From IMG/VR virus record IMGVR_UViG_3300027747_002221, positions 124,001-188,000 of that record: 64,000 bases of DNA. The stretch is one strand, 5' to 3'. Shown here one piece after another: positions 435 to 16,168 of the stretch. The notes under the pieces were generated by a model. The model made no database searches. It saw only the letters and a list, made by a program, of their open reading frames with translations, and had not been told where the DNA came from. Numbering within the stretch: the stretch's first letter is position 1; every line of letters starts with the position of its first letter. A program made the translations under genes and the position numbers.

Positions 435-1774
435 TTTCTAGCCTTGTTATATTCTGTCTTTGAAAAAGAATCCTTAACCACATTCATAGTAATATAATGT
501 GTTTTTGGATTTATTTTATGAGATAAATTTGTTATTAGGTAATACCCGGTATATGCCTCATCTCGTTTTGAGGATGTTTTATCCTCGGATGTAGGTGCAC
601 CCGGTTCTCCTTTTGGAAAAATTATTTTTATAATGTTTCCTACTTCTACATCCGTTCTTCCGGGAATTACAATTTCCATTTTAAAATTATTTAATTCCAG
701 CAAATTTGATCTTCTATTACCAAACGTAACCTTTGGTATTTGATCAAAATTGTTTTCCACCTTAGTGAATAATTTAGGAGTACTATAATTAGTTTTTTGG
801 TATGAGTATGGATTTCTTAATATATTCTTATCAAACATTGGGTAGGAATCTTTACTATTTAGATGTGCGTATTTGTCAAATTCCTCGGGATGTTCATATT
901 CTTTTATCTCATATGTTTTGTTGTACACATCGATATCTACTAAAGAACTTGCAAGATATCCTAGTCTACTGTTGTCCAATTGATTTACTGCGGTTTCCAC
1001 AGATAAGGATTTTATCGCATACATAGCCTTGTGTTTTTCATCTACAGATAAAGTTTTTATATATGCCTCAGAATAAACATATTCACCTATTGAGAATGCC
1101 TCTAAATTGGATAATATACTATCCATACTACCAAAATAAAATCCTTTGGTAGTTTCCCAGAATAAAAAATTTGCAGCTTTTCCTGCAGATGGTAAGCATT
1201 TTCCTGCCAACCAATTAATACATTGGATTGGTGTCCACCCGGGACTAATAAATTTTAGTATATTTTTTGGATATTCTAAAAACGTTAAAGTAGTCTTTAT
1301 GCTAGGTCCTGTAATTATATTCCTATTAGCTTGTATGTAATCTATAAAAATATCGTTTATTACTTTTGATGGAGTTCCTTCAAAAGATTTGTATATGGGA
1401 TTTAACACATCATTAAATCCCTCAGTAGACATGATACCTAATTCATAAATTATTGTACTACTATCGTTCACATAATTTTTATTTTCTAATGAATATATTC
1501 TAAAAGTTTTATATATACTATCTTTGTCAGTTAAGCTGGGGGTTTTTACATTTATAAAAAGATATTCATCTCCTATTAATGGAAAAAGTGAGGTTAAATT
1601 TCTGCTATCAGATAAAATTATTGATCCTGTAACAATAGGATCGAATACGCTTTCATAAAGATTAATTTCTACAAGATAATCTAAAAGACTTATACTTATA
1701 CCTTTATTTAATGAAATTAACTTGATTTCATTTATTTCTATTTGCCCGGGGGCTTGTAATATTTCTTGAGACAT
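431..1774 (-). CDS. Baseplate hub/tail protein (gp27/GpD-like)
   Basis: 447 aa between gp53 and gp5; C-terminal IVIPGRTDVEVGNIIKIIFP...YTGYYLITNLSHKI resembles contractile-tail hub proteins. Confidence 0.6.
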   Translation of the reverse strand: MSQEILQAPGQIEINEIKLISLNKGISISLLDYLVEINLYESVFDPIVTGSIILSDSRNLTSLFPLIGDEYLFINVKTPSLTDKDSIYKTFRIYSLENKNYVNDSSTIIYELGIMSTEGFNDVLNPIYKSFEGTPSKVINDIFIDYIQANRNIITGPSIKTTLTFLEYPKNILKFISPGWTPIQCINWLAGKCLPSAGKAANFLFWETTKGFYFGSMDSILSNLEAFSIGEYVYSEAYIKTLSVDEKHKAMYAIKSLSVETAVNQLDNSRLGYLASSLVDIDVYNKTYEIKEYEHPEEFDKYAHLNSKDSYPMFDKNILRNPYSYQKTNYSTPKLFTKVENNFDQIPKVTFGNRRSNLLELNNFKMEIVIPGRTDVEVGNIIKIIFPKGEPGAPTSEDKTSSKRDEAYTGYYLITNLSHKINPKTHYITMNVVKDSFSKTEYNKARK

Positions 1775-2382
1775 TATTGATTTATTAATGCATTATAATC
1801 TGCAAGAACTCTCTCAACAATAGGTGCCTTTAAGATTTTAATTAATCTATAACTCTCATTAGTTAATTCCTCTACCTCATAATTACTTTGAAAATCTGTT
1901 CCTATTTCCGATTCTTTATATGCAATGGGTGTATTAATACCACCATCATCGGGAGTTTCTATGATTAATCTTTTTGGATTTTTGTGTGTAGAGTCTTCCA
2001 ATAAAACAAAGAATGTGTCGACCTGATATCCTTTTGCATTTACCGCTCTATTAGTAGTAAAAATATCTCTTTCGGTGCCATACTTACTTTGTGTTTGTTT
2101 TATTAAATTATCCTGACTAAGAGGCCATTCAAATCTAGGATCTATAATATTATTCGTTAGTAATATTAACCAATGCAAATTAGGTGTGCCATAAAATCTA
2201 AAAGATAATTGTTCGGGGGTTTCCCCACCCAACACCTCATAAGTTTCAAAATAGGAATTGTTATCCTGAAATTCTTTAGATAAAATTGCTCTCTTAAATA
2301 TATCCTGTATTACCTGTTCGGACTGATTATCATCTAAGGTATAAGCAATTCTCGGAAAGTTCTCAAAAAAATTAGTAGCCAT
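1774..2382 (-). CDS. gp53: Baseplate wedge subunit gp53
   Basis: FFENFPRIAY; GETPEQLSFRFYGTPNLHWLILLTNNIIDPRFEWPLS. Confidence 0.9.
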   Translation of the reverse strand: MATNFFENFPRIAYTLDDNQSEQVIQDIFKRAILSKEFQDNNSYFETYEVLGGETPEQLSFRFYGTPNLHWLILLTNNIIDPRFEWPLSQDNLIKQTQSKYGTERDIFTTNRAVNAKGYQVDTFFVLLEDSTHKNPKRLIIETPDDGGINTPIAYKESEIGTDFQSNYEVEELTNESYRLIKILKAPIVERVLADYNALINQ

Positions 2383-3496
2383 TTGCTTGTATTCCTTCAG
2401 ATGTCATCTGTTCTAATTCTTGAAACTTAAGAGACATTCCGATTTCAATAGGAGCACCATCAGGAAATGTTACAAATTGGTCCCCGCCATAATCAACAAC
2501 TAGATCTGTTAAGGCGCATCTGGCAAATTTATGTAAATAATTATTTTCTTTATCTTTATAGTAATACTTTATATCAAATTCAGAAGGATATATGTAAAAA
2601 AATTTAGTTGCGGAAAGTTCTGGATGCATATGTTTTTTAAATGTGGCTATAATATTTTTTACCTTGTCAGTTTCTTGAGGGGTTTTTGGTAAAAATCTAT
2701 AATTAAATTGAAATGTTCTATAATTAACAGATTCAAATAACACTTCTCTAAATGGATTCGTTTTTGTTCTAGAACTTAATTCTAATAAATCAGAAATAAC
2801 TCCTCCTCCTCCAGATTTTAATGTAGGAATTTTAGCTATTTCCGCAAGTGCTCTTGCCCGCGTTTCAGCATCCCCTAGACTTTCAAGTTTTGTTTTAGCA
2901 GAACTTTGAATTAATATGCCTGCTATGGCACCTATATCTTTATTAGTATAGTTTACTCCATATTGAACCACGGGTTTTTCTGATACATGTAATGTAATTA
3001 CATCAGTAAGTCTAGATGTACTACCTGATTTAAAAGCAGGTAAATCTATTGCTTGTACTATTTCAGATATAGCTGCCCCTGCAACCCCTGCGCCTATGGT
3101 TTTTAACACCAGACCTTTCCAATCTCTAACCTTAGACCCGCTTCCAATTGCAACAGCAGCAGCGGTTCCCGCTGCAATAGTTCCTGCATTATCTAATACG
3201 TTTTGGCCTCCAGAAAAAATTTGATCTTGTGCTAACCTAGAACCACGATTATTTAATGCGTTTATTTCTTTTTGTTTGGCGTCGCTTACGAAAAATGATC
3301 GTTGCTCGTTATTCTTTCCAGTTTTTGCTTTATCTCTAGTATTGATAAAAAATGCAACATAGTTTTGTAAATCTGGTTTTTCCCGCAGACCTTCTGGATA
3401 CTCTAACGCACCAACATTATAATCTGTTAGATATTGATTTTTAAAATTTTTTGTTATGTAATCTTCTATTTCAGATGCGCTACCTAAATTAGACAT
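2372..3496 (-). CDS. gp48: Baseplate tail-tube cap gp48
   Basis: NPFREVLFESVNYRTFQFNYRFLPK...YPSEFDIKY...CALTDLVVDY. Confidence 0.88.
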   Translation of the reverse strand: MSNLGSASEIEDYITKNFKNQYLTDYNVGALEYPEGLREKPDLQNYVAFFINTRDKAKTGKNNEQRSFFVSDAKQKEINALNNRGSRLAQDQIFSGGQNVLDNAGTIAAGTAAAVAIGSGSKVRDWKGLVLKTIGAGVAGAAISEIVQAIDLPAFKSGSTSRLTDVITLHVSEKPVVQYGVNYTNKDIGAIAGILIQSSAKTKLESLGDAETRARALAEIAKIPTLKSGGGGVISDLLELSSRTKTNPFREVLFESVNYRTFQFNYRFLPKTPQETDKVKNIIATFKKHMHPELSATKFFYIYPSEFDIKYYYKDKENNYLHKFARCALTDLVVDYGGDQFVTFPDGAPIEIGMSLKFQELEQMTSEGIQANGY

Positions 3497-3505
3497 ATAT
3501 TTCTT

Positions 3506-3513
3506 TATAAATA
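3506..3513 (+). promoter_or_regulatory. T4-type late promoter TATAAATA for gp4/gp2/gp54/gp26
   Basis: Exact TATAAATA 28 nt upstream of the gp4 start. Confidence 0.8.
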
Positions 3514-3528
3514 TTGTTGGGACACTAT

Positions 3529-3536
3529 TATTTATA
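3529..3536 (-). promoter_or_regulatory. T4-type late promoter TATAAATA for gp48/gp53/hub/gp5
   Basis: tatttata on the plus strand, just upstream of gp48; paired with the 3506 promoter in the same 45-nt intergenic gap. Confidence 0.8.
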
Positions 3537-3540
3537 TTAA

Positions 3541-3999
3541 ATGCTATATACCAAAACCTATAAGGGTAAGTTTAGAACCAAGAATCCTTCGAAATATAGA
3601 GGGGATGTGAACAATATTGTATATCGTTCCTTATGGGAATTGCGTTTTATGAAATGGTGTGATTCAAATTCTTCTGTTCAAGAATGGGGATCTGAAACGG
3701 TAATTGTGCCATATATTTCTCCATTGGATAAAAAAGTGCACAGATATTTTGTAGATTTCTACATCAAAGTATTGGATAAAACTGGAGGATTACAGAAATA
3801 CCTAATAGAAATAAAACCTGAAAGATTCACTAAACCCCCAACTATCCCTGCAAGGAAAACAAAAGCATTCATAGATGAAGTATTTCAATATGGTGTAAAT
3901 GAAGCTAAATGGAAAGCAGCATTCGAATTTTGTCAGGACAGAAATATGAAATTTATGGTATTAACCGAAAAGGATTTAGGACTAATTAATGGCAGATAA
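3541..3999 (+). CDS. gp4: Head completion protein gp4
   Basis: YRSLWELRFMKWCD...WGSETVIVPYISPLD...HRYFVDF...IEIKP. Confidence 0.93.
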   Translation: MLYTKTYKGKFRTKNPSKYRGDVNNIVYRSLWELRFMKWCDSNSSVQEWGSETVIVPYISPLDKKVHRYFVDFYIKVLDKTGGLQKYLIEIKPERFTKPPTIPARKTKAFIDEVFQYGVNEAKWKAAFEFCQDRNMKFMVLTEKDLGLINGR

Positions 4000-12141: not shown

Positions 12142-12163
12142 ATCATTATCCTAAAAAATTTGT

Positions 12164-12187
12164 GTTAGCTTTTAAGGATAAGCTAAC
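12164..12187 (-). terminator. Probable intrinsic terminator after rubrerythrin
   Basis: GTTAGCTT-N8-AAGCTAAC stem; T-run downstream on the minus strand. Confidence 0.55.
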
Positions 12188-12215
12188 AAACCCGTATTAT
12201 ATTAGAAACTACTTG

Positions 12216-12653
12216 TTACTGTGTTTCTTTATGCGCAGCTAATGCCTTGGTAAAACGATTAGCATGGCTACGTTCAGCTTTTGCTAATGTTTCAAACCAA
12301 TCTGCTACTTCTTTAAACCCTTCGTCACGAGCAGTCTTAGCCATACCTGGATACATGTCAGTGTATTCATGTGTTTCGCCGTGAATAGCTGATTCCAAAG
12401 CTTCAGTAGTAGTTTTAGCACTCATACCTGTACCTGGATCACCCGCACCACCCTCGATCAAATATTCCATGTGGCCATGGGCGTGACCAGTCTCACCTTC
12501 AGCAGTACTACGAAACAAGGCGGCAATATCATTATCACCTGCTACATCTGCCATGTTTGCAAAATATAAGTATCTACGATTAGCTTGCGATTCCCCTGAG
12601 AATGCAGCCTTCAAGTTTTCCTCTGTGCGAGTACCTTTAATTTTTTCACTCAT
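12216..12653 (-). CDS. rbr: Rubrerythrin (short form lacking the rubredoxin domain)
   Basis: [23 protein letters not shown]...[10 protein letters not shown]...[14 protein letters not shown]...AERSHA diiron motifs. Confidence 0.93.
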
Positions 12654-12668
12654 ATAATTTTCCTAAAA

Positions 12669-13217
12669 TCAAAAGCTGCGTGTATACTGTAGACGTACTG
12701 CGTCTTTTTCTTCGTCACCGAATGACCGGCTCCAACGAACTGCAACTGCGTCTTGTTTGGTAAGTGCATAACCCACTGCAACGTGTGCGCGTGTTGTCTC
12801 AAACAATTTCTTTGATTCAAAAGAATTACGATAGCGTCCACCTACATCTGCAGTCAAGCCTGCAACTAATGGAAACTTAACACCTGCATCAATAGCGTAA
12901 TGGCTGAAGTGATCTGAGCTGGTAATTTTTTCACCAAGGCGTCCACCTAAATACAATGCACCAAAGCTTTTCTTTGCACGAACTTCAATACCTTGAGAAA
13001 TAGCACCGCTACCAATTTCTGTTTGGCTGTTTTCCATTTTAATACTGTAATCAATACCATCTACTTTGTTACCAACAACAAGTGCTTCCTTGATGTTTTC
13101 TGCGCCGGTTTTGCGATTGCTTTCATCATAGTATTCCAATGATGCATAACCTTGAGCCAATGCGGCACCTGCACTAAATAAAAATGATACTGCTACTAAC
13201 TTAATAATTTTTTTCAA
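12669..13217 (-). CDS. Outer-membrane beta-barrel protein (porin-like)
   Basis: TTG start with AGGAG SD; Sec signal ending AALA; alternating amphipathic strands; C-terminal ...VRLQYTRSF. Confidence 0.8.
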   Translation of the reverse strand: MKKIIKLVAVSFLFSAGAALAQGYASLEYYDESNRKTGAENIKEALVVGNKVDGIDYSIKMENSQTEIGSGAISQGIEVRAKKSFGALYLGGRLGEKITSSDHFSHYAIDAGVKFPLVAGLTADVGGRYRNSFESKKLFETTRAHVAVGYALTKQDAVAVRWSRSFGDEEKDAVRLQYTRSF

Positions 13218-13239
13218 AATAAACTCCTTTTTGTTTTTG

Positions 13240-13289
13240 AATAATAGGTTATTCTGTTGTGAGGAAACCTACCAAAACCCTAGGCAGCG
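13240..13289 (-). repeat. Direct repeat copy B (44/50 identical to 14901-14950, the tmRNA 3' end)
   Basis: Manual alignment, 6 mismatches in 50 nt. Confidence 0.92.
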
Positions 13290-13298
13290 ATTATACTG

Positions 13299-14015
13299 CT
13301 ATTTAGCACTCCAGTATTTAGAGTAATCCAAATTTTTCCAATAATGTTCGTTATTACGATACCAAAAGTTTTTAATAAGATACCATGCCATACCAAAGTA
13401 TCCCATCTGTTGAAATCTTCTATTGTCCTGCCCAAAATAATGTTTTACTAGTTTAAATTTTTTAACGTCATACTTTTTAGAAAGAAAGAAATCTTCACTT
13501 GTACCAAACTTCTCAGGGAACCCACCCAATTTGTCAAACTGTTCTTTTCGTGTTAGCATAAATGCACCAATAGCAAAAGGTACTTTATATTTCATAATAT
13601 TATTTACAGCATTAAACAACATAAAACCAAGCTGCGCTCTTATATCATTATCGTAACATTTTACATACAATCCGACTAAATCAAGATTGCTAGATTCTAA
13701 TTCGTCTACTGCATCACGAATAGTATTAACATTAAAGAAACGAACATCGGCATCGATGAATAGAATATAAGGTGTAGTAACCAATTCAGCCCCTCGGTTC
13801 TTAGCAAAGCTCACAGGACCGCCGTCGATAATTTCAATATTCAATCTACCCTTGTTTGCTTCAATAACATCTCGAGTACTGTCTGTAGAACAGTCTGAAA
13901 TAATAATTCTTGTACTACCTATCATTTGGTAGCGAAGATGCGTCAAGAGATTACATATATAATTTTCCTCATTCTTACATGGGACAACTATTGTTATTTT
14001 ATCACTTAATTGCAT
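13299..14015 (-). CDS. Glycosyltransferase family 2
   Basis: ITIVVPCKNEE, DCSTDST, AKNRGA, LFIDADV (DxD). Confidence 0.9.
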   Translation of the reverse strand: MQLSDKITIVVPCKNEENYICNLLTHLRYQMIGSTRIIISDCSTDSTRDVIEANKGRLNIEIIDGGPVSFAKNRGAELVTTPYILFIDADVRFFNVNTIRDAVDELESSNLDLVGLYVKCYDNDIRAQLGFMLFNAVNNIMKYKVPFAIGAFMLTRKEQFDKLGGFPEKFGTSEDFFLSKKYDVKKFKLVKHYFGQDNRRFQQMGYFGMAWYLIKNFWYRNNEHYWKNLDYSKYWSAK

Positions 14016-14133
14016 ACGTGTGTTTATGATCTATGGACTTTCGTAATGCTTTTAACCACAATTTCTTTTCTTTAACTTTATCATGATTGATACACGCTTG
14101 ATACAACTTCTTTACTATTTTTTGAACTTTCAT
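14002..14133 (-). CDS. Possible small basic protein (43 aa)
   Basis: Manual: MKVQKIVKKLYQACINHDKVKEKKLWLKALRKSIDHKHTYAIK; overlaps the tail of the PlcP-like gene. Confidence 0.4.
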   Translation of the reverse strand: MKVQKIVKKLYQACINHDKVKEKKLWLKALRKSIDHKHTYAIK

Positions 14134-14884
14134 TATCGTTTTCCTTAGTCCAGGTTACAATTTCCCATCGTCCATTATAATGTTCAACAAGAGCAGTACA
14201 AGATTCAACCCAGTCTCCGTCGTTCATATATATGATTCCATCAATCTCTTTAATCTCAGCATGATGTATATGTCCACAAATAACTCCATCATACCCTCGC
14301 TTTTTACAATATCCTGCGAGGTTGTTTTCAAACTGAAACATAAAGTCTGATGCTTTTTTTACTCTATGTTTTAAATACTTAGATAACGACCAATATCCAA
14401 ATCCAAATTTATGACGAACCCAATTAAAACGAGAATTCCAATCTAGAACTAAATCGTATAACTTATCGCCTAGAAATGCTAACCAAGGTGCAAGTCTAGT
14501 AATACCATCAAATAAATCACCGTGCGTTATCAGGTAGTGTTTACCATCAACACCTATATGTTCCGTTTGATTTTTTATTTCAATTAAACCAAAACTGAAA
14601 CCATATGGTATCATTGGCCTTAAGAATTCATCATGATTACCAGCAATGTAGATTACTCTTGTACCTCGTTTAGCGTGTCCAAGAATTCTTCGTACAACAT
14701 TGGTATGAGATTGCTTCCACCGCCATTTATTCTGTTGTATTTTCCATACATCAATAATATCACCTACAAGATATAAAGTCTCGCAAGTATTATGTTTTAA
14801 AAAATTATTTAACTTATCAGCTTGACAATCTCGAGTACCTAAATGAACATCACTTATGAATATTGTTTTATAGGTTCTTTGCAT
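14081..14884 (-). CDS. PlcP-like phospholipase C (LpxH/LpxH2-family metallophosphoesterase)
   Basis: TIFISDVHLGTRDCQA, LYLVGDIID, GNHDEFLR, HGDLFD, WLAFLGD, YWSLS, DGVICGHIHHA, NDGDWVESCTA. Confidence 0.85.
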   Translation of the reverse strand: MQRTYKTIFISDVHLGTRDCQADKLNNFLKHNTCETLYLVGDIIDVWKIQQNKWRWKQSHTNVVRRILGHAKRGTRVIYIAGNHDEFLRPMIPYGFSFGLIEIKNQTEHIGVDGKHYLITHGDLFDGITRLAPWLAFLGDKLYDLVLDWNSRFNWVRHKFGFGYWSLSKYLKHRVKKASDFMFQFENNLAGYCKKRGYDGVICGHIHHAEIKEIDGIIYMNDGDWVESCTALVEHYNGRWEIVTWTKENDNESSKNSKEVVSSVYQS

Positions 14885-14897
14885 AAGTTACCTTTAA

Positions 14898-15213
14898 ATT
14901 AATGATAGGTTATTCTGTTACGAGGAAACCTACCGAAACCCTAAGCAGTGTTTAGGCTGCTAATGCGAACTGTTCGTCGTTTGCGTTTACGTTTTTTGCT
15001 TGATTAACGGTCATCGCCTACCGTGCTGTCCACGCTGTTACTATTTGCCCTGTCGAAACCAATGTCAGGCCCATTAGAAAGAACTCTTTAGTATAGTCTA
15101 TAGCACTTGTCTGTCTCTATACAGGATGAAAAATTCTTTCTGGTGGACCTGGCGGGAGTCGAACCCGCGTCCAGAACATATTTCTCTTTGCTTCATACAG
15201 CAATAACTTACTC
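14898..15213 (-). ncRNA. ssrA: tmRNA, circularly permuted two-piece form
   Basis: Minus strand: T-arm GCGGG-TTCGACT-CCCGC and ...CAGGTCCACCA (ends 15141) come before GGGCCTGACATTGGTTTCGACAGG (starts 15072); 7-bp acceptor stem with G3:U; tag frame ANDEQFALAA-TAA (14984-14952). Outer ends are approximate. Confidence 0.95.
14901..14950 (-). repeat. Direct repeat copy A (3' part of the tmRNA coding piece)
   Basis: See 13240-13289. Confidence 0.92.
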
Positions 15214-15315
15214 TTTTACATTATAAAAAAGACTTTTTGCTATCCAGAACATATAGTTGACTACAACTAAGATGCCCCACATATAAACCCAATGCCAATT
15301 TTCAAACATAAGAAC

Positions 15316-15514: not shown

Positions 15515-16168
15515 CTAAATTAATTTTATACGCTTATATTCTAATCTTAAATCCCTAAAACCATTTATCCATGTATTACGTTTTTCCACAAAGATTAATG
15601 GGTCTTCCTCATCCACCGCAATTAAAATTACTATTTGAGGTACAGGGATCTTTGTCATTTCTTCAAAAGCAACGGCATATGCGGAACATTGCATAAAATA
15701 GTCGTGAATATTATCCTTTTCTTTAATCCTTTTAGATGTTTTAAAGTCTATAACAGACATTTTACCATTATATTCTGCAATACAGTCTACTGTACCAGCA
15801 ACTTCTAAATGATCAGAAAATAACGATTGTTCTAACGCATATATGTTGTTTATATTATGTAGTATAGGTTTAAACTTATTCCACATCTCTATATCAAACA
15901 TATCTGGATTCACAGTTTCGTTCAATAGATATTTTTCAGCTAAAGAATGAATTCGAGTACCACGTCTTGCAGCAGTACTCGAAATTCTGTTCGCTTCTTC
16001 TTCACCCACTCGCTTTCGCCATGCCATAATAGATTGTTTTTTAAGCAATCCGGTAACAGTAGTAACTGATGGATATTTGTTACCTGTTGGTGTTTGATAT
16101 ACCCTAGTACCGTCTTCATTTGTAACACGGTTGAGCTTTGGTAGCTCACATTCTATATGATTAAACAT
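15515..16168 (-). CDS. PD-(D/E)xK exonuclease (Cas4/ExoA-like)
   Basis: YPSVTTV, RGTRIH, EVAGTVDCIAEYNGKMSVIDFKTS, YFMQCSAYA. Confidence 0.88.
   Translation of the reverse strand: MFNHIECELPKLNRVTNEDGTRVYQTPTGNKYPSVTTVTGLLKKQSIMAWRKRVGEEEANRISSTAARRGTRIHSLAEKYLLNETVNPDMFDIEMWNKFKPILHNINNIYALEQSLFSDHLEVAGTVDCIAEYNGKMSVIDFKTSKRIKEKDNIHDYFMQCSAYAVAFEEMTKIPVPQIVILIAVDEEDPLIFVEKRNTWINGFRDLRLEYKRIKLI

What the first reader, a model, noticed from the sequence alone, without database searches (positions are those of the whole stretch)
13240..14950. The PlcP/GT cassette is bracketed by a 50-bp direct repeat of the tmRNA 3' end
Seen: 14901-14950 and 13240-13289 are 44/50 identical. Copy A is the tail of the tmRNA coding piece, and both copies keep the GTAGGTT...AACCTA stem. 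Each copy sits 16-23 nt before a start codon (the PlcP-like gene and the porin gene). Known: tmRNA genes are common integration targets and islands regenerate a duplicated end. Inference: either a 1.66-kb module inserted or excised by recombination at the tmRNA end, or the structured RNA end was reused as a processing or stabilising leader for downstream mRNAs. No integrase is present in the window.
Basis: partly seen in the sequence, partly recalled or inferred. Interest (0 to 1): 0.7.

Follow-up and report, generated by a model that had tools for sequence, protein, structure and literature searches.

The report
Duplicated tmRNA tail flanks phage cassette
In a 222-kb freshwater T4-like phage, the last ~70 bases of the phage's own tmRNA gene are duplicated on either side of a membrane-lipid gene module; the hairpin in the spare copy is kept by selection just upstream of an outer-membrane protein gene, showing how these phages add genes behind a structured RNA gene without an integrase.

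Summary
The repeat is real and longer than reported: 13240-13310 matches 14901-14971 at 58/71, and these are the only two copies in the 222-kb phage genome. Copy A is the 3' tail of a two-piece tmRNA: last tag codons, stop-codon helix and terminal hairpin. Copy B is a displaced partial copy lying between the GT2 gene and a 10-stranded outer-membrane barrel gene (porA). Empty sites exist. In L033/L034, L048, L039 and L044 the tmRNA tail runs straight into a porA orthologue with a homologous leader. Other relatives carry different cargo at this spot (a 24-aa PqqA gene, a small 'sm9' gene), each followed by another copy of the tail hairpin. There is no integrase in the genome, and the region is a hypervariable stretch of a T4-like phage. 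In second copies the tmRNA-specific loop and tag remnant decay, but the 8-bp stem stays paired through compensatory changes (97.8% paired; 4 of 8 pairs changed on both sides). The stems differ from the tmRNA stem of the same genome. I conclude that recombination duplicated the tmRNA tail and that its hairpin is now used as an intercistronic RNA element. Its exact role (attenuator, processing or stability) is inferred, not shown. The closest known analogue is the PeSL cassette of T4-type phages.

The parts
14879..15244 (-). Two-piece (permuted) tmRNA gene of the phage. The TATAAT at 15220-15225 aligns with the -10-like element in the Rfam model.
   Evidence: Rfam RF01850 134.3 bits (gathering score 84) and RF04321 137.7 bits. 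ARAGORN calls a permuted tmRNA at 14861-15233.
14952..14984 (-). tmRNA tag reading frame, ANDEQFALAA plus stop.
   Evidence: ARAGORN coding part at 250-282 of the gene; sequence.
14901..14971 (-). Repeat copy A, the 3' tail of the tmRNA coding piece. It holds the last tag codons, the stop-codon helix (14944-14961) and the terminal hairpin (stems 14927-14934 / 14904-14911, 15-nt loop 14912-14926).
   Evidence: the repeat finder family D1; fold; aligned to positions 278-304 of RF01850. The loop is invariant and the stems covary among phage tmRNAs.
14081..14884 (-). PlcP-like / LpxH-like metallophosphoesterase, first gene of the 1.66-kb module.
   Evidence: Pfam Metallophos 2.5e-10. NCBIfam LpxH models match only below cut-off. 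Thousands of 80-93% identical homologues in freshwater metagenomes.
14002..14133 (-). Conserved 43-aa ORF overlapping the end of the phosphoesterase gene and the start of the GT gene. Status uncertain.
   Evidence: ORF cluster 16 recurs in L003/L015 and, in a different context, in L009/L024.
13299..14015 (-). Family-2 glycosyltransferase. Its last codons and stop (13299-13301) lie inside copy B.
   Evidence: Pfam Glycos_transf_2 6.6e-16; sequence.
13240..13310 (-). Repeat copy B, a displaced partial copy of the tmRNA tail. It holds a remnant of the tag end, a remnant of the stop-codon helix (13284-13299) and the hairpin (stems 13266-13273 / 13243-13250, loop 13251-13265 with 2 changes).
   Evidence: L035 keeps a less diverged version of the same junction.
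12669..13217 (-). porA: signal peptide plus a 10-stranded outer-membrane beta-barrel ending ...YTRSF. Its leader (13218-13239) is homologous to the tmRNA-to-porA spacer of the empty-site relatives.
   Evidence: Translation. AlphaFold2 pLDDT 85.9 with 10 strands. Foldseek returns only outer-membrane barrels. Leader comparison.
12216..12653 (-). Rubrerythrin gene, a further cassette. It is a clean indel against L032/L035/L036 and is bracketed by a ~15-nt duplicate of the last porA codons (12669-12686 vs 12201-12215).
   Evidence: Pfam Rubrerythrin 9.1e-27; identity profile; junction sequences.
12163..12188 (-). Terminator-like hairpin plus T-run, the likely end of the tmRNA-to-rbr transcription unit. 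The same hairpin follows porA in relatives that lack rbr.
15515..16168 (-). PD-(D/E)XK exonuclease, the conserved left anchor of the variable region.
   Evidence: PHROG 298 1.4e-72; synteny.

Best explanation
Copy A is the functional 3' tail of the phage's two-piece tmRNA. Copy B is a partial duplicate of that tail (about 75 nt, from the last tag codons to the terminal hairpin). It arose when two related T4-like phage genomes with different cargo behind the tmRNA recombined out of register, or equivalently when a circular cassette carrying a tail copy recombined into the tail. This used the phage's own recombination system, not an integrase. The usual arrangement in this phage group is tmRNA, about 25 nt, then porA. 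Here the phosphoesterase-GT2 module separates them, so porA keeps a private copy of the tail as its leader. The spare copy is not a tmRNA: its tag remnant and loop drift. Its hairpin, however, is maintained by selection as an RNA structure about 20-30 nt upstream of the next start codon. Most likely it works as intercistronic punctuation on a transcript that starts at the tmRNA promoter. In that role it would be a leaky attenuator or 3'-end-protecting hairpin for whatever lies upstream (tmRNA, pqqA, sm9, GT mRNA) and a structured 5' leader for porA, which in these phages has no promoter of its own. Shown here: the duplication, the empty sites, the alternative cassettes, the lack of an integrase, and the compensatory changes. 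Inferred: the recombination path and the RNA-level role.
For: Repeat and tmRNA identity. No integrase in 222 kb. T4-like context with gp32, RNR, ligase and PhoH. Hypervariable gene content between the conserved nuclease-tmRNA and c0-c1-gp32 anchors.

Empty sites: L033/L034 (porA 85% aa), L048, L039 and L044 have an ARAGORN-confirmed tmRNA whose tail is followed directly by porA with a leader homologous to the one after copy B. DNA-run contigs join 13235 to 14909 at depth 36, against about 5 for the filled form.

Other cassettes bracketed by tail copies: sm9 (L011, L023, L024; spacing 302-310), pqqA (L046, L051/53, L056-60), and GT-hairpin-pqqA-hairpin-porA in L035. The rbr cassette shows the same signature, using the 3' end of porA.

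Selection on the hairpin: among 12 second copies, 97.8% of cells are paired and 4 of 8 pairs changed on both sides, against 32-59% paired in the slid controls. The second-copy stems differ from the tmRNA stem of the same genome in L024, L051, L056 and L059, so gene conversion does not explain the pairing. Second-copy loops decay, while tmRNA loops are invariant even in loci fetched through porA rather than through the hairpin.

Transcription: porA homologues outside tmRNA phages carry TTGACA-17-TATAAT or TATAAATA promoters instead of the hairpin. No promoter-like site lies between the tmRNA and porA on the minus strand. One RNA-library contig of a relative runs from the tmRNA tail into the porA leader.
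Against: No transcript ends could be mapped. RNA runs were available only as low-depth contigs and may contain DNA. The hairpin is AU-rich with a large loop: its folding z-scores are not significant and the terminator scan does not call it. Among the closest relatives, copy B is no more conserved than its flanks, so for this particular copy neutral persistence cannot be excluded. One second copy (L024) precedes a gene that is not an outer-membrane protein, so the link to porA may be by descent only. Many of the tmRNA copies were found with a pattern that fixed the loop, which inflates the apparent invariance; the porA-anchored subset is small, about 8 lineages.
Confidence: 0.6

Rival explanations
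1. Copy B is only a neutral scar of one illegitimate recombination event, and its hairpin survives because the event is fairly recent.
For: Copies A and B are still 82-88% identical. Within the window's own clade, copy B varies about as much as its flanks. Folding energies are not better than shuffles.
Against: Older second copies (pqqA type) have lost the loop and the flanking tmRNA sequence, yet keep perfect 6-9 bp stems of five different sequences. These stems differ from the tmRNA stem in the same genome. The element always ends 19-33 nt before a start codon.
Confidence: 0.2
2. The two copies are chiefly recombination sites still in use (PeSL-like). Homologous exchange between them excises the 1.66-kb module as a mini-circle and re-inserts it elsewhere, and the RNA structure is secondary.
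For: Filled and empty sites exist, with several cassette types each flanked by tail copies. There is no integrase. PeSL-flanked cassettes and mini-circles are documented in T4-type phages (PMC2839356, PMC4122927).
Against: The longest exact match between copies A and B is only 15 nt. No precise recombinant junction (copy A's left flank joined to copy B's right flank) was found in IMG/VR. No near-identical genome has the empty site, and the empty-site contigs in DNA runs match only 21-27 nt on the shorter side of the joint at >=92% (the porA-leader side), so they belong to other lineages. The recombination breakpoints that separate the close relatives lie inside porA, not at copy B. Compensatory divergence of second copies destroys DNA homology while keeping RNA pairing.
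Confidence: 0.12
3. This is a classical genomic island integrated by a site-specific integrase into the 3' end of a tmRNA gene, with copy B as the displaced attachment-site fragment.
For: The topology matches: an intact tmRNA gene at one end and a 3' fragment as a direct repeat at the other. tmRNA genes are known island targets (PMC4383910).
Against: No PF00589 integrase in the 222-kb genome, with the control positive in 14/14 genomes. The module encodes only a phosphoesterase, a small ORF and a GT2. The setting is a lytic T4-like phage, not a chromosome. The duplication boundaries differ between cassette types.
Confidence: 0.02
4. The repeat is an assembly artefact or chance similarity.
For: None beyond the general risk in metagenome assemblies.
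Against: E 2.4e-15 within the genome. The same arrangement appears in independent assemblies from other samples (L016, L018, L032, L036) and in run contigs.
Confidence: 0.01

Closest known systems
PeSL (promoter-early stem-loop) cassettes of T4-type phages (Arbiol et al. 2010, PMC2839356; Comeau et al. 2014, PMC4122927)
   Same: A T4-like phage and a hyperplastic region. A short repeated intergenic motif with a stem-loop sits just upstream of the Shine-Dalgarno sequence and start codon of the next gene and flanks non-essential cargo genes. A relative has a single copy at the empty site. No integrase is involved.
   Different: The repeat here derives from the 3' end of a structured RNA gene (tmRNA). 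No sigma-70 promoter was found in it. There are only two copies in the genome rather than a dispersed family. Mini-circles and terminator activity are untested, and no A x B recombinant junction was seen.
Genomic islands integrated into tRNA/tmRNA genes (Islander database, PMC4383910)
   Same: An intact tmRNA gene at one end of the inserted DNA and a displaced 3' fragment of the gene as a direct repeat at the other.
   Different: There is no integrase and the host replicon is a lytic phage. The repeat is imperfect, and its inner boundary varies between cassette types. The fragment's hairpin is under selection in its own right.
Phage-encoded two-piece tmRNA (e.g. Methylophilales phage Melnitz, PMC9004378)
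   Same: A permuted ssrA gene in an aquatic T4-like myophage, lying in an operon with downstream genes.
   Different: No glutamine riboswitch was detected here (Rfam gathering scan). Duplication of the tmRNA tail and its use between cargo genes is not mentioned in the passages I retrieved from that paper.
Intercistronic or 5'-terminal stabilising stem-loops and leaky intrinsic terminators in bacterial operons (own knowledge: the ompA 5' UTR hairpin, REP hairpins in malEFG, the hairpin after pqqA)
   Same: A hairpin between cistrons, often followed by a short U-rich run, next to an outer-membrane protein gene and after a pqqA gene.
   Different: Function here is inferred from covariation only. 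The stem is AU-rich with a 15-nt loop, which is not typical of a terminator.

Membership tests
Two-piece (permuted) tmRNA, Rfam RF01850 / RF04321 | Full covariance-model match above the gathering score, including the tRNA-like domain, the tag frame and the 3' hairpin | tested here: met
   Copy A lies within a match of 134.3 bits (gathering score 84) and one of 137.7 bits (gathering score 47). ARAGORN calls a permuted tmRNA with tag ANDEQFALAA.
Two-piece (permuted) tmRNA, Rfam RF01850 / RF04321 | Copy B as an independent tmRNA or tmRNA piece (tRNA-like domain, intact tag frame) | tested here: not met
   No Rfam or ARAGORN call at 13240-13310. Only the last ~75 nt are present, and the tag remnant is overwritten by the end of the GT gene.
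tDNA-targeting genomic island | Intact target gene plus a displaced 3' fragment as a direct repeat at the island ends | tested here: met
tDNA-targeting genomic island | Integrase gene (tyrosine or serine recombinase) in the island | tested here: not met
   No PF00589 match in the whole 222-kb record, with the control positive in 14/14 genomes. The module's genes are a phosphoesterase, a small ORF and a GT2. Serine recombinases were not searched separately.
PeSL regulatory cassette | Location in a hyperplastic region of a T4-like phage, flanking non-essential cargo | tested here: met
   gp32, RNR, ligase and PhoH are present. Gene content between the conserved anchors differs in nearly every relative.
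PeSL regulatory cassette | Repeated intergenic motif with a stem-loop directly upstream of the Shine-Dalgarno sequence and start codon of the next gene | tested here: met
PeSL regulatory cassette | Strong sigma-70-like early promoter inside the motif | tested here: not met
   No promoter-like site was called in either copy. Copy B has a lone TATAAT at 13290-13295 without a -35 element.
PeSL regulatory cassette | Many dispersed copies per genome | tested here: not met
   Two copies in 222 kb by BLAST and by covariance model.
PeSL regulatory cassette | A relative with a single motif at the empty site | tested here: met
   L033/L034, L048, L039, L044.
PeSL regulatory cassette | Excised mini-circles; measured terminator and promoter activity | not testable with these tools
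   This needs inverse PCR and reporter assays. The in-silico search for the recombinant junction was negative.
Intrinsic (Rho-independent) terminator | GC-rich stem, short loop and a following U-run | tested here: inconclusive
   Not called by the scan. The stem has 3 G-C pairs and a 15-nt loop. Several copies are followed by 4-6 T, but the window's two copies are only weakly so.
H-type pseudoknot (tmRNA PK-like) | A second helix between the purine run 5' of the stem and the start of the loop, supported by covariation | tested here: inconclusive
   92-95% of cells can pair in two alternative registers, but there are no double-sided changes.

The most novel reading that the evidence does not exclude
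The terminal hairpin (possibly a pseudoknot) of a phage tmRNA has been taken over as a portable cis-acting RNA module. It would end or protect the abundant tmRNA while letting some transcription pass. It would be cleaved at the conserved GGUUU just 5' of the stem, giving the next mRNA a hairpin-capped 5' end. Because every phage of the group carries it in near-identical form, it would also serve as an integrase-free docking point where cargo cassettes (lipid-remodelling genes, pqqA, outer-membrane barrels) are exchanged between distant phages. On this reading an RNA-gene end acts as both expression signal and cassette dock.
Probability: 0.25. Interest if true: 0.7.

Novelty: new variant of a known kind. 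Interest (0 to 1): 0.55.

Why it matters
The locus gives a concrete, sequence-resolved example of how large lytic phages gain and reorder auxiliary metabolic genes without integrases. Each insertion carries a short duplicate of the 3' end of the preceding gene, and here that end is a structured RNA whose hairpin is then reused. It links three topics usually treated apart: phage tmRNAs, hyperplastic-region shuffling, and intercistronic RNA structure. It also offers a natural series of second copies, from fresh to strongly diverged, in which to test what a tmRNA 3' hairpin does outside a tmRNA. Finally, it marks a hot spot where freshwater phages trade membrane-related cargo: an LpxH/PlcP-like phosphoesterase, a GT2, a hydroxylase, a desaturase, outer-membrane barrels, rubrerythrin and PqqA.

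Tried and rejected
- **Integrase-mediated island:** rejected. No PF00589 match in the genome.
- **Dispersed repeat family:** rejected. There are only two copies by BLAST and by covariance model. The weak hit in the tRNA cluster (E 1.5) was inspected and left as a note.
- **Promoter or terminator inside the repeat:** the consensus scan called neither.
- **Thermodynamic support:** z-scores of -1.4 to +0.15, not informative for this AU-rich RNA.
- **Pseudoknot:** compatible in two registers, but without double-sided covariation.
- **Host tmRNA with the same tail:** the genome-contig scan returned only four MAG contigs. Two (L070, L071) carry permuted tmRNA genes and one (L069) a tag-plus-hairpin tail next to the phage sm9 gene; the fourth (L068) has no tmRNA. 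No clear bacterial host emerged.
- **Precise A x B recombinant junction:** none in metagenome contigs. That collection holds almost none of these phages, since one search found only the window's own contig, so this negative is uninformative. None in viral contigs either, which is the more meaningful negative.
- **RNA evidence:** only Logan contigs were available. They show very high depth on tmRNA-like sequence and 2-14x on the cargo genes, and they cannot place transcript ends or exclude DNA carry-over.
- **Copy B as the crossover point between close relatives:** not supported. Identity drops inside porA, after the signal peptide.
- **pqqA in the window's own genome:** the search was uninformative because its control also failed.
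- **Sharkady & Williams 2004** (beta-proteobacterial two-piece tmRNA) is not held in the library, so I could not check how that paper names the hairpin.
Full report
**What the window is.**
The window is bases 124001-188000 of a 222,055-bp IMG/VR virus record rated complete. Its genes mark a T4-like myophage from fresh water: gp32, ribonucleotide reductase, ATP-dependent ligase, PhoH, a MazG-like protein and a PD-(D/E)XK exonuclease. The sequencing runs that hold it are lake metagenomes. No tyrosine integrase is encoded anywhere in the record, and the control search was positive in 14 of 14 genomes.

**The observation.**
The 50-nt match is 44/50 as stated. It extends to 71 nt at 82% identity: 13240-13310 against 14901-14971, spacing 1661. 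These are the only two copies in the genome, both by BLAST (E 2.4e-15 for the second copy) and by a covariance model of the hairpin.

On the minus strand, 15244..14879 is a permuted two-piece tmRNA: RF01850 at 134 bits, RF04321 at 138 bits, ARAGORN tag ANDEQFALAA. Copy A covers the last tag codons, the helix whose loop holds the stop codon, and a terminal hairpin of 8 bp with a 15-nt loop. That hairpin aligns to positions 278-304 of the beta-tmRNA model, and its loop resembles the model consensus.

Copy B has the same two hairpins. The glycosyltransferase gene ends inside it: the stop codon at 13299-13301 touches the first base of the remnant helix. Copy A ends 16 nt before the phosphoesterase ATG. 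Copy B ends 22 nt before the TTG of a signal-peptide protein.

**The flanking genes.**
- The first gene of the module is a calcineurin-like metallophosphoesterase. It has thousands of close homologues in freshwater assemblies.
- The second gene is a family-2 glycosyltransferase.
- The gene after copy B has no Pfam or NCBIfam match. An AlphaFold2 model built on 17 homologues (pLDDT 85.9) gives a signal helix and ten long strands, and Foldseek returns only outer-membrane barrels. The protein also ends in the typical ...YTRSF. I call it porA.

**Relatives.**
A pattern for the hairpin found 27 IMG/VR loci. A search with porA, which does not depend on the hairpin, found 34 more.

All of these phages share a conserved exonuclease-tmRNA block on one side and a c0-c1-gp32 block on the other. 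The genes in between differ in nearly every lineage. This is a hyperplastic region in the T4 sense.

The empty site exists. In L033/L034 (porA 85% identical, exonuclease only 59%), L048, L039 and L044, an ARAGORN-confirmed tmRNA is followed after about 25 nt by porA. The spacer in those loci is homologous to the leader after copy B in the window.

Run contigs agree. Two DNA runs hold contigs that join 13235 to 14909 at depth 36, against about 5 for the filled form. One RNA-library contig runs from the tmRNA tail into a porA leader. These contigs match only 21-27 nt on the shorter side of the joint at 92% (the porA-leader side), so they come from other lineages and are not excision products of this phage.

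**More cassettes of the same build.**
- In L011/L062, L023 and L024, a small gene ('sm9') follows the tmRNA and is itself followed by a second hairpin copy 302-310 nt after the first.
- In L046, L051/53 and L056-60, a 24-codon gene that matches Pfam PqqA (37.9 bits, cut-off 21.1) sits between the tmRNA and porA and is followed by a hairpin copy.
- In L035 the order is GT, hairpin, pqqA, hairpin, porA. One DNA-run contig shows the same extra ~130 nt at copy B.
- The inner boundary of the duplicated tail differs between types. It includes the tag end and stop-codon helix in the GT type, and starts just 5' of the hairpin in the sm9 and pqqA types. These are therefore separate events.
- The rubrerythrin gene downstream of porA shows the same signature, with a ~15-nt duplicate of the last porA codons on either side.
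- L015/L003 carry the phosphoesterase and GT without copy B. Behind the tmRNA they keep an internally deleted porA: its first dozen codons, its last codons and its terminator hairpin.

Against that backbone, which is the closest one outside the window's own clade (exonuclease 76%, phosphoesterase 86%, 2OG 82%), the foreign piece in the window is the tail-porA-rbr block rather than the phosphoesterase-GT pair. Which of the two moved cannot be settled; the topology is the same either way.

**Selection on the hairpin.**
Among tmRNA copies from loci fetched through porA, the loop is invariant while the stem takes four forms. Three more stem forms appear in the MAG contigs (L069-L071) returned by the loop-fixed genome contigs pattern, so those do not test loop invariance. 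Over 27 copies, the stem is 97% paired and three pairs changed on both sides.

Among the 12 second copies alone:
- 97.8% of cells pair.
- Four of eight pairs changed on both sides.
- The slid controls pair at 32-59%.

In L024, L051, L056 and L059 the second copy's stem differs from the stem of the tmRNA in the same genome, so copying from the tmRNA does not explain the pairing. In the same second copies the loop shrinks or changes and the tag remnant decays. The spare copies are therefore kept as hairpins, not as tmRNA parts. A short purine run 5' of the stem can pair with the start of the loop in every copy, but without double-sided changes a pseudoknot remains only possible.

**How it most likely works.**
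- *Shown:* the duplication, the empty and alternative sites, the absence of an integrase, and the compensatory changes.
- *Inferred, step 1:* out-of-register recombination between co-infecting relatives with different cargo, or single-crossover entry of a circle carrying a tail copy, produced the structure tail-cargo-tail-porA. The phage's own recombination functions would do this, as proposed for PeSL cassettes.
- *Inferred, step 2:* the hairpin acts on RNA. In phages without a tmRNA next to it, porA has its own TTGACA-17-TATAAT or TATAAATA promoter and no hairpin. In the tmRNA phages only 19-33 nt with a ribosome-binding site separate the hairpin from the start codon, and no promoter-like site was found between the tmRNA and porA. 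Transcription must therefore pass through the hairpin. A terminator-like hairpin follows only after rbr.

A leaky attenuator or 3'-end-protecting structure for the upstream RNA, which at the same time leaves the porA message with a structured 5' leader, fits these facts. It also fits the U-rich runs after many copies, the steep fall in RNA-library depth just past the tmRNA (with the caveats stated there), and the lineages where a tRNA follows the tail after 4 nt. None of this has been measured.

**Comparison and novelty.**
Phage two-piece tmRNAs are known (PMC9004378). Repeated stem-loop motifs that flank shuffled cargo in T4-type hyperplastic regions are also known (PMC2839356, PMC4122927). 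Displaced tmRNA 3' fragments at island ends are known for integrase-driven islands (PMC4383910).

This locus combines the topology of the third with the setting and integrase-free nature of the second. It fails the PeSL tests for an internal promoter and for dispersed copies, and it fails the island test for an integrase. Two things are new. The repeat is the tail of an RNA gene, and its hairpin is then maintained independently in front of, or behind, different cargo genes. I rate it a new variant of a known kind, of moderate interest.

**Limits.**
- Many tmRNA copies were ascertained with a pattern that fixes the loop.
- The second-copy set is small and related by descent.
- The RNA data are contigs only.
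- No near-identical genome with an empty site and no A x B junction was found, so current mobility is unproven.

Noticed in passing
window 12216-12653 (rbr), with 12669-12686 and 12201-12215: The rubrerythrin gene is a clean insertion relative to L032/L035/L036 and is bracketed by a ~15-nt duplicate of the last porA codons. Its protein is 97-99% identical in phages whose core genes are only 34-40% identical (L044, L037/L038), which points to recent lateral transfer.
   Followed up: partly
window 12750-13150 (mature part of porA): Between genomes that are 96-100% identical in GT, copy B, the porA signal peptide and the downstream genes, the mature barrel is only 70-85% identical at the nucleotide level. 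This suggests diversifying selection or allele replacement inside the gene.
   Followed up: partly
L035 546-620; L046 3814-3888; L051 248-322; L056 144-218; L059 488-562: Relatives encode a 24-aa PqqA precursor peptide (Pfam PF08042, 37-38 bits in the two scanned, L035 and L056; cut-off 21.1) between the tmRNA or GT and porA. It is a phage-borne pqqA and hints at a PQQ-using (methylotroph?) host.
   Followed up: partly
window 14002-14133 (-): A 43-aa ORF overlaps the end of the phosphoesterase gene and the start of the GT gene. Homologous small ORFs occur upstream of the tmRNA in L009/L024, so it may be a real small gene.
   Followed up: no
L015 4909-5042 and 6633-7915 (also L003): Behind the tmRNA sits an internally deleted porA (14-codon ORF, last porA codons and its terminator hairpin). 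The cargo there is a phosphoesterase, a GT2, an Asp/Asn beta-hydroxylase-family protein (PF05118) and a fatty-acid desaturase (PF00487), forming a membrane-lipid gene cluster.
   Followed up: partly
G000:C1:31311-31361 (L067 about 1500-1551, minus strand), outside the window: A weak hairpin-model hit (15 bits, E 1.5) with a similar GGGTTTG-stem-15-nt-loop-stem layout lies in a 200-nt spacer of the phage's tRNA cluster, next to a long-arm tRNA-like sequence. It could be chance or an old tail remnant.
   Followed up: partly
window 13290-13295 (-): In copy B the loop of the remnant stop-codon helix reads TATAAT where the tmRNA has CCTAAA. No matching -35 element was found. One RNA-library contig (X16, 12888-13289) ends one base downstream of it, which may be coincidence.
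   Followed up: partly
L007 1130-1240, L019, L028: In some relatives the tmRNA tail is followed after 4 nt by a tRNA gene and a tRNA cluster, so RNase P cleavage could define the tmRNA 3' end there.
   Followed up: no
L011 8520-8545, L022 196-215 and other tmRNA loci: The helix that carries the tag stop codon shows clean compensatory changes (AGCAG/CUGCU, AGCCG/CGGCU, AGUGG/CCACU). Tags vary (ANDEQFALAA, ANESSYRLAA, ANDSSYEYALAA and others) while the terminal loop stays invariant.
   Followed up: partly
window 14880-15147: In lake metatranscriptome contigs, tmRNA-like sequence reaches depths of 875-3763, against 2-14 on the neighbouring cargo genes. In DNA runs the same bins are only about 10-40x above their neighbours, so phage or related tmRNAs are probably abundant RNAs in these lakes.
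   Followed up: partly
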